Positions 1 to 8,062 of a stretch of 64,000 nucleotides of DNA are shown here, piece after piece; within the stretch, counting starts at the first letter, position 1; every line of letters begins with the position of its first letter. The position numbers and the translations under genes are program-made. Where the stretch lies: positions 5,684 to 69,683 of the forward strand of contig JAHLWZ010000475.1 of NCBI GenBank assembly GCA_020536535.1. The letters run 5' to 3'. A model generated the notes under the pieces. The model did no database searches. It was not told the origin of the DNA and saw only the letters and a program-made list of their open reading frames with translations. Source of the DNA: Pelomyxa schiedti. Lineage: Eukaryota > Protista > Evosea.

Positions 1-3000
1 CAATGCCACTGGCCTCAGTGATTCGGGAGCCCGGTTGATCAAGTTTCCTCCTGGCGCCTCGTTTGGGCCAAGCTGAAGCATCCCAGGCGCAATTCCGCCA
101 GAACCTGAAGGGTTGATGTTCACTGATGTCCCAAAGTCACAGAGCACAGTGAACTGGCCGGTGAACCCTGATCTCTCGAGGAGGAGGATGTTGTCAGACT
201 TGATGTCCAAGTGGAACAATCCCCGCTTGTTGTTGAGGTGGTCAACAGTTGCGAGAAGCTGGAAAGTGCTCTCCAGGGTCTGGTCCCTTCCAAGAGGAAG
301 GACCACGGTGGGGGCGGCTCTGGATGGTGACGCGTGGTTGGCTGCACGGCTGGTTGTGTGATGGCGGGGCTGCTGCTGTGGTCTAACTGTCACGACTGTT
401 GTTTGAACGTGCTTCTCGAGGGTTGTTGATCCAAGCTCCTGTGTGATGAACGTTGTTCTGTCATAAATTGACACGCGATCTTGGTCGTCAGCGCCCCTGT
501 TCAATGGATTTCCAGTCTCAGAGGAAACCAAGTACATCTTTCTGTCTCTGGGAATCAAGACTTCCTGTTGCAGGCACGTGAGATGGCTGCAGTTTGCTGG
601 GGGGTTTACCTGCGTGTAACTTCGGAAAAAGCTCAGGATGTTTGCGACTCCCCAGTGGGTGTTTTGTATGAGCGAGATATACTCTCTGTCAAACCGGTTT
701 CTCTGGTGCTCTGTGGTTCCAATTCCACCAGGCTGAACCACTAAGTTGAACATCATCTTCAGTGCCACACCTTGCTCCATTATCTTCCTTGGGATGTGCC
801 AATCGCTTGTTGGTTTCAGCATCACTTTACTTGTGGTCCCATTGCACCCGACTCCAATGATCTTTTCGTTGTCAGAGACGAGTAATAGCACAAAAAAAAA
901 CTGCAGGAAAAACCTGGGCAGACATAATGTCCAAGTCACCGATCTCAATTGCTCTCGTGCAGCTGAAATCAACGCATGAGGAGAACCTCTCCCAAAACTG
1001 TGTGAAATGTGGACAAACATTCAATTTTTAGATGAAACTTACCAACAATAATTTAATGTCATCACGCTGAACTTGAGTTTCCTACCCCAACACTCAGGCG
1101 TCAGAAAACAAAAACAAGGTGACAAGGTGAACTTCTACCTGCAAAAATGCCGATTTTACTGTTTTAATCAAAGTTGAGATGTGGTCCAAGCGGCACAACG
1201 AACTGCAGTCATGGCCTTCTGCTATGGCGTTTCTTGTCCCAAGCCTATTCCTGGGTCTGACACAACTGCTGTTTTGTGTGTCTTCACACATTTCTGTTGT
1301 CGTAGATATCGGGTCTGATGTTTTTCGCAAGGAATTGTTGGTTGTATGTGGGAATGGTGATACAGTCTGCAATTGCTGAGGGAACTCTTGATGCAACATG
1401 GAAGAAACAACTGAGATTATTTCAGACACTGAAGAATTCGAAAATGTGGGTCCCTGAGTTGGCAGACAGAAATGATGATTGAAATATCTTTTCCCTGGGT
1501 TGATTGGTCAATCCCCATAAAAGAAGTCTCACCCTTCCCCCATAATGGTATACCATTGGCGATTGCAACGGGACTTGGCACTGAGCCTATTCGATATTTT
1601 CGTTAGGTACGGCTTAGAGAAAGTGTGGATTTAACATGGGATGCAATTCTTTGAATCAAGGAGTTCAATGGTACTGTCAAACAAGTTAGGATTTGGCGGA
1701 AGAGGCTTATGTGCTGTTGGTATAAGATAAATGTGAAAGCCGCATTGGATGGGAAAGTATGCAACGGTGTCCACAATAACAGATGAAAGGTCCGATGGAC
1801 CCTCTACAAGCAGTAAAGCTCCCACAACCGGATTGATGAGCCAAGTGAACCAAACAAAGTGATTGCCTGATGATGTAAAAGAAGAGTGCAACAATGAATA
1901 AGAGTAAAAAAGAAGTGGGCAAAAAAGAAAGCTTACTCCCACATCTCTGACTCAGGCGGTTCTTGTTTAGGGAGTCGGTAATTTTCGATGCACCCTCATC
2001 ACCAATGCTGTTGCCTTGTTGTCGTTTTGAGGATTTTGTTTTTGTTGGTGAGTTGAACAGAAGTGTGTGTGAAGAGGGTATTTATTTGTCACATACCTCC
2101 AAGATACAGACTCACGAGTGACTTGTTTGACACAAGTGATTCGGCAATTTTCGATGCACCCTCAGCACCAATTCTGTTCCCTTGTTGTCGTTTTGAGGAT
2201 TTTGTTTTTGTTGGTGAGAGAGGGTATTTATTTGTCGCACACTTCCAAGATACAGACTCACGAGTGACTTGTTTGACACAAGTGATTCAGCAATTTTCGA
2301 TGCACCCTCATCACCAATTCTGTTCCCTTGTTGTCGTTTTGAGGATTTTGTTTTTGTTGGTGAGAGAGGGTATTTATTTGTCACACACTTCCAAGATACA
2401 GACTCACGAGTGACTTGTTTGACACAAGTGATTCGGCAATTTTCGATGCACCCTCATCACCAATGCTGTTGCCTTGTTGTCGTTTTGAGGATTTTGTTTT
2501 TGTTGGTGAGAGAGGGTATTTATTTATCACACACATCCAAGATACAGACTCACGAGTGACTTGTTTGACACAAGTGATTCGGCAATTTTCGATGCACCCT
2601 CATCACCAATGCTGTTCCCTTGTTGTCATTTTGAGGATTTTGTTTTTGTTGGTGAGAGAGGGTATTTATTTGTCACACACATCCAAGATACAGACTCACG
2701 AGTGACTTGTTTGACACAAGTGATTCGGCAATTTTCGATGCACCCTCAGCACCAATGCTGTTGCCTTGTTGTTGTTTTGAGGATTTTGTTTTTGTTGGTG
2801 AGAGAGGGTATTTATTTGTCACATACCTCCAAGATACAGACTCACGAGTGACTTGTTTGACACAAGTGATTCGGCAATTTTCGATGCACCCTCATCACCA
2901 ATGCTGTTCCCTTGTTGTCGTTTTGAGGATTTTGTTTTTGTTGGTGAGAGAGGGTATTTATTTGTCACATACCTCCAAGATACAGACTCACGAGTGACTT

Positions 3001-3571
3001 GTTTGACACAAGTGATTCGGCAATTTTCGATGCACCCTCATCACCAATGCTGTTCCCTTGTTGTCATTTTGAGGATTTTGTTTTTGTTGGTGAGAGAGGG
3101 TATTTATTTGTCACACACATCCAAGATCCAGACTCACGAGTGACTTGTTTGACACAAGTGATTCGGCAATTTTCGATGCACCCTCAGCACCAATGCTGTT
3201 CCCTTGTTGTTGTTTTGAGGATTTTGTTTTTGTTGGTGAGAGAGGGTATTTATTTGTCACACACTTTCAAGATACAGACTCACGAGTGACTTGTTTGACA
3301 CAAGTGATTCGGCAATTTTCGATGCACCCTCATCACCAATGCTGTTGCCTTGTTGTTGTTTTGAGGATTTTGTTTTTGTTGGTGAGTTGAACAAGTGTGC
3401 CGTGTTTATGTGTGAAGAGGGTATTCGTGAGCAAATGGGGCGTGTCGACACACCTCTCAGCACCAGATTGGCACAAACACACTGAGGGTGTTGCAGAGCA
3501 CTACAAAGACACGGTAGTGGTATATGGTCGCTGGTATCTATGACCGTTTTGAGGTGCAGGTCAGAGCTCAT
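1..3571 (-). CDS. LRR-array (RI/NLRC3-type, 10 exon-encoded repeats) plus linker plus PINK1-like Ser/Thr kinase; runs off the window's left end
   Basis: ATG at 3571. Exon 1 (3571-3454) ends in phase 1, followed by nine 84-nt exons (xNSIGDEGASKIAESLVSNKSLVSLYLG) and a degenerate tenth (2014-1937). Later exons splice in phase: FLQ|ETQVQRDDIKLLL|FWERF...MSAQ|IIGVGCNG...VALKMMFN...RSYTQ|EVLIP...FHLDIKSDNILL...VLCDFG...GGNLINRAPE. The GCNG, LKMMFN and GGN..APE motifs resemble the PINK1 family. Splicing between about 1430 and 1690 is not fully resolved. Confidence 0.8.
1937..3453 (-). repeat. Tandem array of 146-bp exon+intron units
   Basis: Exons at 2097-2180, 2243-2326, 2389-2472, 2535-2618, 2681-2764, 2827-2910, 2973-3056, 3119-3202 and 3265-3348. 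They are separated by 62-nt introns (GT[AG]TG...CAACAAG). The flanking introns are 82 nt (2015-2096) and 105 nt (3349-3453). Confidence 0.97.
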
Positions 3572-4348
3572 AGTGGGTGCCGACAAAAAACCGGGCCCCC
3601 CTCACTGTAATTAATTCCTCTTTACAAAAAATTGTTTTGGACACCCTGGTGGCTGCCGCACCCCATCTCACTCATTCTTGTTGGTCGCCGGCAGGCCAAC
3701 GGAGGCACCAAAAACTCGCCACTCACACATGGTGCACCTTGCTTTCTTGAGAAAAGTTTCAGGATACTGGCATTTGAGTCCAGGACTGTGATCACTCCGC
3801 CTTTTTGGGTAGGTCTGTGACGCTAATCCGGCAACTTGGTTTTTGGTTGGTGTTGTGTACCGTGGAGAACTACTAGATACGTCACGCGTCACAGTTCAAT
3901 GCAAGGTTGGCGTTCGTACGGACAGAGGGAAAAAAAAGTGCAACAACATCACCCACACACCAGACAAGCACCATCCGCATTGGGCAACCATCTGATGAGG
4001 ACTCCTCCTTATGTGAGTCCGATAATCGTATCCACCAACAGTGAAGGTAACCACACTTTTATCAGAGAGCAAGTTCCGAGAAGCAGCGAGATCATAGTTC
4101 AGGTTAACCAAAGAGCCAGAAATTCAACAACCTGTTGCACCTTCCAAGGCACACTAAGTTGAGTTCCTCAATTTTGTGTCTGTTGAGCTTTTGTGATAGG
4201 CCCAAGTCATGGTATCTATCATTCACGTGAATTTCCGGGAAAACAATCAGTTGCTCAAACAGGTATTACTTATTTTAATTTAAAAAAACCCCTCTTCATT
4301 TCGTTTTTTCCCCTTTGTGTTGGTTTTTCTTCCACAGCCTTAGTGACA

Positions 4349-5030: not shown

Positions 5031-5548
5031 AGCAGAGACCCGGAATGATGGAGCCCAGCCATGACAAACAGCGCTACTTTGAGTTTGGGTATGATTGTTC
5101 TTCTACCTTCTAACTGCCAACGAAATTGTTCAGGTGGAAACATGTGGATGGCAACAGCAAGGCGTACTGCAGCCAGCCCCTTGCTCCTGTATCCTTCCAT
5201 GTGCTCCCAGGACCCCTGGCTCTGGCTACACATGCTGCCCCAGCAGCCCACTACACCTTACACCCACGCCTAAGGGAACAAAAAAAAAAGGAATAAAAAA
5301 AAGCTAGCACAGATTGGCAGAACCCGAACTGGGGCCACTGTGTACACAAATTGGGCCCCACTCTGGGCTCCCACCTCCCAAACTGGGGCCAGTTTGACTT
5401 CAGGGTGATATCACACGTAACCAATGGGAATGAGAGTGTTAATACTTCCGAAAAGAACCAGTGCATCTTTGCTACAGAAGACTGATGCTGTGTCCCACTC
5501 TCAGAGGTCGAACGTCAAAAGGGAGAAGAAAATGGTTTTCGAAGCTAT

Positions 5549-8062
5549 CTAGTATTGTTTGCTATTTCCACGTCGGCCTCGTGACGACTTCCTCCTGTTG
5601 GGTGTGTAGCGGTTGTTTCGCAACGGGTTGTTGGAATGTGAGCCCGTGCTGGTGTTTGGGGACAAGGTGGGGTCTGACTCCTCACCACCAGGTGCTGTGG
5701 AGTTCCAATAGGGGGGGTAATATACAGGAGTAACTGTCGGTTGCTGTATGTGGAAAATAGATGGGGGCTGTGACAAAGAAATTTGTGGTGGGTCCGGGTA
5801 TGCTGCTGTAAGTCCGGTGTATGGCAGCTCAGTAGTTGAAACTGGTGGCTGTATGTAAGTAGCTGGAAAGAATGATCTCGGACCAGGTCTTGTGTATTGT
5901 GGCTCAACAATTGGATGTACATAGGTTGCTTGTGGTTGCTCTTGATGTGGAGGAAGAACTTGCGGCGTCTGGAGAGGCACAGACTGAGCCAACACAAAAC
6001 TTACTTGGCTAGTTTTCAGTAGCATTAGGTAGTGAGGAACTCCATTGGCGGAGTGTGCAGATTTTAGTTCACAGGAGCTGCAAACCAACTCCTCTCCAGG
6101 GCAATTGACACACACGAAAATTTTTCCTCCTGGTTGTCCCAGTATATCTGCTACTCGCATTTCGCAGCACGAACAGTGATCAAAGCCTTCCTCAAATGTG
6201 TGCTGATGTGCCTCCTGTCTTTGCATTTGTAGATCAGCAGCGTTTTTGGCCTGCCACAGCTGTCTGACTTTTTCTTCACGCACTGTTGACAGTGTGAGAA
6301 GAATTTGGGGAAAACTTGTTGCAACATTCAGGTCTGCAATGAATGTTCAAATGGCTGAGCCCTCTTTCCTTTGTATGAACAAATTGATCAAGGCACTTCG
6401 CACAATACCTTTGTTTTGTTGGCTTTTTAGAGGAGTGGGAAGAGGACGTACTCCTGCCTGCAATGAGGGCAAGTCATATGTGCACAACCTGGGTCTTCAC
6501 CTTTTTTCTTCCACTCCTCTTGATTGAGAATCGGAACAAAGCACTTCTGACATGGAATAGATACAATTTCGACCAGTCTTTTAGCTTGCTCCTCTTCTGT
6601 GTCATGTCACATAATACAAACTTTGAAATAAAAAACCTCTTAGCTTGGATTCTAACAAAGCACGGTGTTGACTTCGGGATGCCTCACGTTCCACTTGCTC
6701 CTTTATCACTTTTTCGTATTGCGCACATGATATGAGGTAATGATAGGGATATCTTTTGCACAGAGTACAAAATTCCGTATTGCAAGTTTCTACCTGAAGA
6801 GGGTGAAAACTAGTACAAGTCATAAGATTTATTTCATACTGGGCATATTGCAAGTTCCCGTTCGTCGGGGTTTGACCGTTCAATAGTGCCACAGCAGTCC
6901 GGTTTTGGGCAACACACATAGAGGGTGGAGGAAGAGGTTACTGCCCTTAGTGACAAGTCTGTTGCATAAAAAAAATTATTCCAAGAGGTTACGAAGTTGT
7001 AAAGCTGACCTAAATATTTGTCAAAGGTGCCACCATCAACTAACTTTTGAATTTCGGTCTGTGTGTAGAGATGTTCACATGTGGGGCACTTGATGGGAAA
7101 AGTTCTGTCTTGAATCTTCCCTGCAATATATTGTTGAACGCAAGCATTGCACAAATCGTGTGCTGCACTGCAAACCGCTTGTGAAACTTACACAGGTCAA
7201 TAAGGAAACTATAATGGATGACTGTACATTTCATGTCCTCTGGAATGTCCTCCAAGCATATCTGGCAACTAAATGTTTTAATCACTGGCGCAGCTTGTTG
7301 TGGAGCGGCGACAGTCTCTTGTGTTTGTGGCCATATCTCAAAATTTACCAAATTGAATTCTACACCAGGATGCTCTGTCAGGAGATGAATTTGAAAAGCC
7401 TCGAGATCATCTTCTCCATGTTGGCGACCACATACAGGACAAGAGTAGATTCCCTGATTGTTTGTTGTATGTCCAAGTCTAGACTGCTGAAGTTGTGCAG
7501 GAGCATCAACAACATGCACGCGTGGAGAGTTGGCTGCCGCTGATTCAATTCCGGTAGGAGCAGCAACTGGGGAGCAAAAAGCAGCCTCATTGTCAGTGTC
7601 GTCATCAGTGTCACTTGGAGCGGAAAATGTTACGCCATTGCCCAGCGGTCTGGGCTGCACTGCGCGAGACTCCAAAGGAGTAGTAGCTTTTCCAGGTACC
7701 AGTAGCTCGTAAGTAGCGTTCCTCCTCGGCAAAACAAACATGCCTTCGTAAGCACCGCCGTCCTGAACGGAGAAAATATCGTCGGTTTCCCGCATCAACC
7801 CCGCACCAACGGTTTCCTGTCGTAGTCGCCACAGTGAAGGATGAGATCCGAGATTAAAGTGTCGCTCCAGATCCGCCGCAGGCACAGCCACCACTTGGTA
7901 CGGCATGAATACCCCAACGTATGGCTCCACAGATTCGTACATCTTCACCTCCAGATAAACGCCGGCGGCATTTTCCTCGCTTTGACAGCCGGCCCCGGCT
8001 GAGTTGTCATCGTCCTTGGGGGGAAGGAAATGCGCCCCGTTCGGCCCCTCGTTGCGCTGCAT
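5549..8062 (-). CDS. RBR (RING-IBR-RING) E3 ubiquitin ligase with C-terminal ZZ-type zinc finger and Pro/Gln-rich tail
   Basis: RING1 is CQICLEDI...CSAAHDLCNAC...FPIKCPTC after removing a 41-nt intron. IBR is CCPKPDCCG...ICPV..C..EFCTLC. RING2 is CQKC...PGCAHMTCPHCRQEYCAKC. The ZZ-like finger is CSCC...FVCVNC...VCSSC...H...H. An N-terminal C2H2-like motif reads CPVC...HLLTEH. Confidence 0.88.

What the first reader, a model, noticed from the sequence alone, without database searches (positions are those of the whole stretch)
1..3571. Candidate diversifiable receptor kinase: an exon-cassette LRR array fused to a PINK1-like kinase
Seen: ten LRRs, each on its own symmetrical phase-1 exon, and in-phase exons linking them to a kinase with PINK1-type motifs (IIGVGCNG, LKMMFN, HLDIKSDNIL, DFG, GGNLINRAPE). 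There is no signal peptide. Known: canonical PINK1 has no LRRs, and one-repeat-per-exon LRR arrays are linked to exon shuffling in candidate immune genes such as brown-algal ROCO proteins. Inference: a cytosolic sensor kinase whose recognition surface can be rebuilt by unequal crossover or exon skipping without frameshift. It could act in surveillance of bacteria or endosymbionts.
Basis: partly seen in the sequence, partly recalled or inferred. Interest (0 to 1): 0.85.

Follow-up and report, generated by a model that had tools for sequence, protein, structure and literature searches.

The report
Variable LRR sensor with PINK1-like kinase
An intact gene of the symbiont-carrying amoeba Pelomyxa schiedti joins a fast-changing array of leucine-rich repeats, one per exon, to a kinase related to the Parkinson's enzyme PINK1; two versions of the gene in the sequenced cells differ in repeat number and sequence, as variable immune-type sensors do, but its function and any exon skipping are unproven.

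Summary
Observation largely confirmed. The genome is Pelomyxa schiedti. The minus-strand gene has 19 exons and about 1,070 aa, and ends beyond the window. It has nine full 84-nt phase-1 LRR exons, one partial exon, a beta-rich 'cap' domain, a linker and a non-RD kinase. The reading frame is open throughout. RNA confirms three introns and an LRR-LRR splice, but no RNA bridges LRR to kinase. The kinase's nearest solved relative is PINK1 by profile and fold. It belongs to a Pelomyxa expansion of about 50 loci and lacks PINK1's targeting region and HRD arginine. New here: a second haplotype of this locus has 7 repeats instead of 9, with different repeat sequences, and a probable allele pair of a paralogue has 13 versus 9. 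Amino-acid change is concentrated at the predicted concave face (dN/dS-like 1.7 versus 0.3). The same LRR-cap head precedes a different kinase or a SAM-caspase tail elsewhere. Unequal crossover is supported; exon skipping and an immune role are not shown. One-LRR-per-exon arrays are known from NOD/NLRC receptors, brown algae and Tetrahymena. The scan already noted this family on other contigs.

The parts
3454..3571 (-). Exon 1: ATG at 3571, 39-aa N-cap with the first half repeat; phase-1 donor; no signal peptide
   Evidence: homologous first exons in paralogues; start not confirmed by RNA
2097..3348 (-). Nine 84-nt phase-1 exons, one 28-aa RI/NLRC-type LRR each (starts 3348, 3202, 3056, 2910, 2764, 2618, 2472, 2326, 2180), 62-nt introns; exons 96.7% and introns 97.1% identical
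   Evidence: LRR-to-LRR splice seen in an RNA contig
1937..2014 (-). Tenth, partial LRR exon (78 nt, phase 1-1)
1636..1866 (-). 'Cap' exon (FVWFTW motif), small beta-rich domain with no Pfam or Atlas match, shared by about 15 loci
   Evidence: 3' intron confirmed by RNA
1554..1586 (-). 33-nt linker exon, both flanking introns confirmed by RNA
   Evidence: (skips of 49 and 59 nt)
1139..1494 (-). Linker exon (GKxYF motif, then low-complexity spacer), phase 1-0
   Evidence: 5' part covered by RNA
1043..1081 (-). 39-nt phase-0 exon, start of the N-terminal helical extension of the kinase
   Evidence: inferred from splice sites and frame
914..997 (-). 84-nt phase-0 exon with the family's DFS..RAIE motif just before the Gly-rich loop
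   Evidence: homologous to P0001-P0004
610..861 (-). Kinase N-lobe exon: IIGVGCNG, ALKMMFN, alpha-C Glu; followed by a 45-nt in-frame intron
   Evidence: the intron equals a 15-aa gap against P0001
1..564 (-). Kinase exon with HLDIKSDNIL (non-RD), DFG, GGNLINRAPE; continues beyond the window, then a 127-nt intron and the last exon with subdomains IX-XI and the PINK1-like C-terminal helices (L026:5548 to about 4630)
   Evidence: RNA contig over 539 to the next intron, and that intron confirmed

Best explanation
A cytosolic, variable LRR sensor coupled to a PINK1-family, non-RD kinase, and a member of a modular Pelomyxa family (first exon + LRRn + cap + exchangeable tail). The array is remodelled in the lineage by unequal crossover or conversion between near-identical exon-intron units. 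Because all introns are phase 1, any gain, loss or reordering keeps the frame, and it also recombines the split codon, which is the most variable residue of the concave face. Shown: gene structure, open frame, haplotype differences, concerted evolution, concentration of amino-acid change at that face, alternative tails, PINK1-like fold. Inferred: one transcript; ligand binding on the concave face brings kinase domains together through the split N/C-terminal helical domain (as in PINK1 and PEAK1) and triggers phosphorylation; the ligands are fast-changing non-self molecules of prey, parasites or symbionts.
For: Frame and phases. RNA-confirmed introns and LRR-LRR splice. C2132 matches both flanks at about 98%, carries 4 of 4 substitutions of run X2, has 7 full repeats against 9, and has its own 53-nt introns and exon variants. 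C2066 against C617: flanks 99% and 97%, 13 against 9 repeats. Within-locus exon identity 85-97% in young arrays, against 62-83% between loci other than these pairs and C720/C815. Young arrays: 51 non-synonymous and 7 synonymous changes at the five concave x positions, against 18 and 21 elsewhere; Fisher p 2e-5. Tails: PINK1-like kinase in 6 loci, another kinase type in C406, SAM plus caspase-domain with His-Gly and DAC in C933 and C644. NCBI's own models of two paralogues join LRR and kinase. PINK1 is the top hit by profile (E 1e-30 against 1e-19 for the next family; 4e-43 against 1e-28) and by fold (Z 31.2, rmsd 3.8, 347 aligned; PEAK1 29.3; other kinases 25.6 or less). [quoted passage not shown] A cytosolic LRR kinase controls bacterial killing in Dictyostelium (PMC7003747).
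Against: No RNA bridges LRR to cap or linker to kinase. dN/dS above 1 at the concave sites is not significant on its own (p 0.11); the sites were fixed from the LRR consensus after seeing the alignment, and the count treats recombinant codons as mutations. The whole kinase family is non-RD and is fused to many non-immune-looking heads (ARM, actin, MSP, Sel1), so non-RD says little about this gene. RI-type LRRs also serve in cytoskeletal and axonemal proteins. No ligand, localisation or activity data.
Confidence: 0.55

Rival explanations
1. A real LRR-kinase of ordinary internal signalling or scaffolding. The array turns over by slippage-prone recombination simply because the units are alike; surface positions vary through relaxed constraint, not selection for new specificities.
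For: dN/dS-like value at the concave sites is 0.86 over all loci and not significantly above 1 in young arrays. Exons and introns are equally homogenised. The kinase family has many housekeeping-like heads. One-LRR exons are common in many gene families (PMC6642158).
Against: In young arrays, change at the five concave positions runs about three times the synonymous rate of the whole unit (0.84 against 0.26), while outer surface positions are mostly conserved. The two haplotypes share almost no identical exon. The tails are kinase or caspase types typical of sensor systems.
Confidence: 0.3
2. A combinatorial receptor system acting within one cell's life: exon skipping, or recombination among the many nuclei, yields many LRR variants from one locus.
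For: Every skip keeps the frame, and all combinations of exon ends and starts at this locus give sense codons (5 residues in one haplotype, 8 in the other). One RNA contig has a junction plus continuation that is not an adjacent pair in either assembled haplotype. RNA runs show mosaics of the two DNA haplotypes.
Against: That RNA record is a 114-nt de Bruijn unitig: its junction matches the ordinary ninth-to-tenth exon junction, and the continuation can be a graph join or a third haplotype. Each DNA run shows one long haplotype over the unique part. The RNA cells are different cells from the DNA cells.
Confidence: 0.1
3. LRR part and kinase are separate genes, or the repeat counts are assembly artefacts of amplified single-cell DNA.
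For: RNA gaps at both joints. The assembly pools seven amplified cells and has haplotype mis-joins at this scaffold (L026:1-524 is the other haplotype's last exon). C2132 ends inside the cap exon.
Against: Open frame with canonical sites over 19 exons. The same order and spacing in five paralogues. No alternative start is needed. Longest exact repeats are 154 and 110 nt. The haplotypes differ in unit sequence, not only in count.
Confidence: 0.05

Closest known systems
PINK1 (animal mitochondrial ubiquitin kinase)
   Same: Top match by family profile and predicted fold, including the N- and C-terminal helical extensions; KMMFN, GGN..APE and K.D.WA.G motifs; an insertion at the place of insertion 3.
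   Different: No targeting sequence or membrane anchor; LRRs instead; HLD in place of HRD; only 20-24% identity in the structural alignment; about 50 paralogues instead of one gene; substrate unknown. PINK1 is listed as metazoan-specific in PMC3789837.
PEAK1/Pragmin pseudokinases (split helical dimerisation domain)
   Same: Second-best fold family (6bhc, Z 29.3, whole model aligned).
   Different: 15% identity. The Pelomyxa protein keeps Lys, alpha-C Glu, catalytic Asp and DFG. The dimerising role of the helices is recalled from knowledge of PEAK1, not tested.
NOD/NLRC receptors (NOD2, NLRC3-type LRRs)
   Same: One 28-aa RI-type LRR per frame-preserving exon, with the border in the beta strand (PMC6642158); fold match to NOD2 and NLRP LRRs; NCBI names two paralogues 'NLRC3'.
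   Different: No NACHT domain; LRRs are N-terminal; the effector is a kinase.
Brown-algal ROCO LRR genes
   Same: One-LRR exons, shuffling, and selection on concave-face sites (PMC11378527).
   Different: 72-nt phase-2 exons and a ROC-COR domain there; alternative splicing documented there, not here.
[quoted passage not shown]
   Same: Clonal exon arrays, repeat-number variation by unequal crossing over, a junction codon (PMC6564038).
   Different: 90-nt phase-2 exons and thousands of genes there; here a small family with a shared cap and kinase or caspase tails.
Dictyostelium LrrkA/DrkD
   Same: Amoebozoan LRR kinase with no signal peptide or membrane segment, acting in killing of ingested bacteria (PMC7003747).
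   Different: Homology was not tested; LrrkA is not described as PINK1-like or as a variable exon array.

Membership tests
PINK1 | Kinase domain closer to PINK1 than to other kinases of known structure | tested here: met
   Family profiles rank all PINK1 chains first; fold of paralogue P0001 likewise. The focal fragment alone gave no PINK1 hit; it is 66% identical to P0001.
PINK1 | N- and C-terminal helical extensions around the kinase | tested here: met
   Model residues 1-501 align to PINK1 124-570; homologous sequence is present in the focal gene.
PINK1 | N-terminal mitochondrial targeting sequence and membrane segment | tested here: not met
   The N-terminus is an LRR cap and array; the only hydrophobic stretch is modelled as beta strands.
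PINK1 | HRD catalytic loop | tested here: not met
   HLD here; HLD, HMD or HCD across the family.
PINK1 | Activating Ser before alpha-C (Ser228 human, Ser205 Tribolium) | tested here: inconclusive
   Gly-Thr-Thr at that place. The family's conserved Thr aligns two residues downstream of the PINK1 site (numbering partly from memory).
PINK1 | Orthology by phylogeny with animal PINK1 | not testable with these tools
   No tool returned a PINK1 sequence by id. The tree (quick method) shows only that most Pelomyxa members form one clade and the LRR-fused ones a subclade.
PINK1 | Phosphorylates ubiquitin or Parkin | not testable with these tools
   Needs an assay. IBR-domain genes exist in the genome, but Parkin was not identified.
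NLR (NOD/NLRC) | 28-aa RI-type LRR, one per frame-preserving exon | tested here: met
   PMC6642158
NLR (NOD/NLRC) | Central NACHT/NB-ARC NTPase | tested here: not met
   No such domain in the exons or in full-length paralogues.
LRR receptor-like kinase (membrane) | Signal peptide and one transmembrane helix | tested here: not met
ROCO | ROC-COR tandem | tested here: not met
Exon-shuffled LRR candidate receptors (brown algae, Tetrahymena) | Repeat number and order vary between alleles or paralogues | tested here: met
   9 against 7 and 13 against 9 in allele-like pairs; about 8-17 across loci; short-read assemblies only
Exon-shuffled LRR candidate receptors (brown algae, Tetrahymena) | Diversifying selection on concave-face sites | tested here: inconclusive
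   Strong enrichment (p 2e-5), but dN/dS above 1 is not significant alone (p 0.11).
Exon-shuffled LRR candidate receptors (brown algae, Tetrahymena) | Alternative splicing of LRR exons | tested here: inconclusive
   One ambiguous unitig junction.

The most novel reading that the evidence does not exclude
Pelomyxa has an NLR-like, NACHT-free intracellular receptor system: variable LRR-cap heads, diversified between or within cells by unit exchange, exon skipping and a split junction codon, signal through PINK1-family kinases or caspase-domain tails to monitor symbionts or invaders. PINK1's ancestor would then be a general proximity-activated sensor kinase rather than a mitochondrial one.
Probability: 0.15. 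Interest if true: 0.85.

Novelty: new variant of a known kind. Interest (0 to 1): 0.55.

Why it matters
Little is known about how unicellular eukaryotes tell symbionts from prey and parasites, and Pelomyxa lives in an obligate consortium with prokaryotic endosymbionts (PMC10579272). This locus gives a concrete candidate sensor whose alleles already differ in repeat number and at the predicted binding face, so the question can be tested with long reads and binding assays. It also places a PINK1-type kinase module, usually treated as animal-specific, in an anaerobic amoeba with non-mitochondrial heads. That bears on PINK1's origin and on how its helical extensions couple proximity to activation. 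The exon design and its recombination are known from other lineages, which limits the surprise.

Tried and rejected
Single-sequence search of the focal kinase against PDB gave only weak NIK hits; PINK1 appears only with family profiles. Word-based homologue searches returned no animal PINK1 and no other cap-domain protein, so no PINK1 phylogeny was possible. P0029 is an unrelated eIF2-alpha-type kinase. The Atlas gave nothing for the cap and only generic kinases for the kinase. Fold searches of the LRR-cap model were filled by LRR hits, so the cap's fold is unassigned, not shown to be new. A transmembrane reading of the cap was rejected (strands in the model, charged residues in paralogues). 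My first model skipped the 997-914 exon and was corrected. The second copy of the last exon at L026:1-524 is not a tandem paralogue but the other haplotype. C720 and C815 were considered as alleles and rejected (89% in exon 1, unshared upstream flank). Contig depth was not used as copy number. An exon-skipping reading of the RNA junction was considered and left open. The careful tree did not finish; only the quick tree is cited.

Full report
Source. The window is G000:C475:5684-69683 of a 52.37-Mb, 5,337-contig genome. Those figures match the Pelomyxa schiedti assembly made from seven amplified single cells (PMC8887013), and the closest database proteins are labelled P. schiedti.

Gene structure. 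The gene is on the minus strand. A 118-nt first exon (3571-3454) is followed by nine 84-nt AG..GT exons in phase 1 with 62-nt introns, a 78-nt partial tenth exon, a 231-nt cap exon, linker exons of 33, 356, 39 and 84 nt, and three kinase exons, the last outside the window. The frame is open for 1,029 codons up to a scaffold gap; collapsing the duplicated 121 nt around the gap gives 1,072 aa. The joined translation was computed in scripts only to check frame, phase and hydropathy. As the operators required, it was never used as a search query: searches used window or locus references piece by piece, or NCBI's deposited paralogue proteins, and the joined step was left out.

Reads. I laid four runs on L026:4985-7863, which holds the kinase, linker, cap and one repeat unit. 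The rest of the array was left out because the tool turns away long repeats. RNA contigs confirm the 49-, 59- and 127-nt introns, show the kinase exon unbroken from 539 to its donor, and show an LRR exon spliced to an LRR exon. They do not bridge LRR to cap, or linker to kinase, so a single transcript is inferred. The inference rests on the open frame, the same order in five paralogues, and NCBI models that join both parts in two of them. Two DNA runs each give one long contig from the last LRR exon through the kinase; they are probably among the assembled runs, so they are not independent.

Allelic variation. Run X2 differs from the window by 34 substitutions and in-frame indels. Contig C2132 matches both flanks of the array at about 98%, extends into the upstream neighbour, and carries all four X2 substitutions in the overlap, so it is the second haplotype. 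It has seven full repeats instead of nine, 53-nt intron variants, and exons beginning AC that the window lacks; only one exon sequence is identical between the two arrays. The longest exact repeats are 154 and 110 nt, within reach of the assembly's reads, though counts from short reads remain provisional. C2066 and C617 have flanks 99% and 97% identical and 13 against 9 repeats: a probable second allele pair, on short flanks. Units are more alike within a locus than between loci, which is the signature of unequal crossover and conversion.

Where the repeats vary. Over 101 units the scaffold residues are nearly fixed. The two x positions before the Asn of LxLxxNx are the most variable of the repeat, and the x positions after the Asn and inside LxL are also among the most variable. 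In arrays over 88% identical, the five concave positions carry 51 non-synonymous and 7 synonymous changes, against 18 and 21 elsewhere (Fisher p 2e-5; dN/dS-like 1.72 against 0.31). A value above 1 is not significant alone (p 0.11), and the counting method is crude. The most variable residue is the codon split by the intron. At this locus every pairing of an exon end with an exon start gives a sense codon, so re-ordering units creates new residues without mutation.

Exon skipping is not shown. The RNA junction, with its continuation, is not an adjacent pair in either haplotype, but its junction k-mers match the ordinary ninth-to-tenth junction and the record is a short graph unitig from other cells.

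The kinase. Only 42 proteins among 1.84 billion representatives match the focal kinase fragment. Profiles of them rank every PINK1 structure above all other kinases. The AlphaFold model of paralogue P0001 (pLDDT 84) matches PINK1 at Z 31 over its whole length, including both helical extensions, with PEAK1 next and generic kinases well below. Catalytic residues are intact but the loop is HLD. There is no targeting sequence. The genome holds about 50 such loci, a lower bound, fused to ARM, actin, MSP, Sel1 and other heads. Most form one clade, and the LRR-fused ones a subclade. Relatives occur in unidentified metagenomic contigs, at least one of which looks eukaryotic. So it works from a PINK1-type module but fails membership of PINK1 proper; orthology could not be tested.

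The family of heads. The cap exon occurs at about 15 loci. It has no Pfam or Atlas match and is modelled as beta strands, not a membrane helix. Behind first exon, LRRs and cap lie a PINK1-like kinase (C475, C733, C617, C995, C831, C860), a different, probably TKL-type kinase (C406), or a weak SAM domain plus a caspase domain with His-Gly and DAC motifs (C933, C644). These other fusions are read from genomic order; I did not build their full exon models.

Mechanism. Most likely (0.55) this is a cytosolic variable sensor: ligand binding on the concave face brings kinase domains together via the split helical domain and triggers phosphorylation, while unit exchange renews specificity across generations. 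The structure, variation and fold are shown; binding, activation and the non-self ligand are inferred. Non-RD status fits immune kinases (PMC8463890) but is family-wide, and LrrkA offers a functional analogue in Dictyostelium (PMC7003747). The rivals are neutral turnover in an ordinary signalling protein (0.3), within-cell combinatorial diversification (0.1), and split genes or artefact (0.05).

Novelty. One-LRR-per-exon arrays are described for NOD/NLRC genes (PMC6642158), brown-algal ROCOs (PMC11378527) and Tetrahymena (PMC6564038). I found no paper describing PINK1-like kinases in amoebozoans or this fusion, in a library that lacks most subscription journals. Earlier notes of this scan describe paralogues and the kinase family. 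The summaries I could see do not mention the allele-level repeat differences or the caspase-tailed relatives of this cap family. Verdict: new variant of a known kind, interest 0.55.

Noticed in passing
L026:1-524 (C475 start, outside the window): A 92.6% copy of the gene's last exon is the X2 haplotype scaffolded onto the contig start behind an N gap; it is an assembly artefact, not a paralogue.
   Followed up: yes
L037:5890-7500 (C933) and L038:7180-8930 (C644): LRR-cap heads followed by a SAM-like domain and a caspase domain with His-Gly and DAC motifs that recalls paracaspases; candidate sensor-protease genes.
   Followed up: partly
L032:7520-9600 (C406): LRR-cap head followed by a kinase of another type, probably TKL.
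   Followed up: partly
L034:3357-4750 and 5300-6150 (C720): LRR-cap gene with no recognisable tail. An ORF that looks by eye like a LINE endonuclease lies about 2 kb downstream on the other strand (no Pfam hit); possibly a disrupted member.
   Followed up: partly
   Followed up: no
L030:5536-7540 (C995): The 17-repeat array contains an internal block duplication: several units recur in the same order about 1.4 kb apart.
   Followed up: no
P0005, P0007, P0012, P0016, P0019: The same PINK1-like kinase is fused to ARM repeats, a second kinase, actin, an MSP domain and Sel1 repeats in other Pelomyxa models.
   Followed up: partly
L039 (ENA contig, 2.07 Mb) and L040/L041: Relatives of the kinase in unidentified metagenomic contigs, one beside actin and CTP synthase, another among ankyrin and AIG1 genes; the family extends beyond Pelomyxa.
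   Followed up: partly
L026:about 3300-4250, minus strand: The downstream neighbour looks by eye like Sec24 (Gln-rich N-terminus, zinc-finger motif); not tested.
   Followed up: no
window:5549-6283, minus strand: 244-aa ORF with a ZZ-type-looking zinc finger and a Pro-rich tail; not tested.
   Followed up: no
L026:4985-6222, RNA runs X3 and X4: The RNA contigs carry mosaics of the two DNA haplotypes, which suggests further alleles or recombination in the culture.
   Followed up: partly
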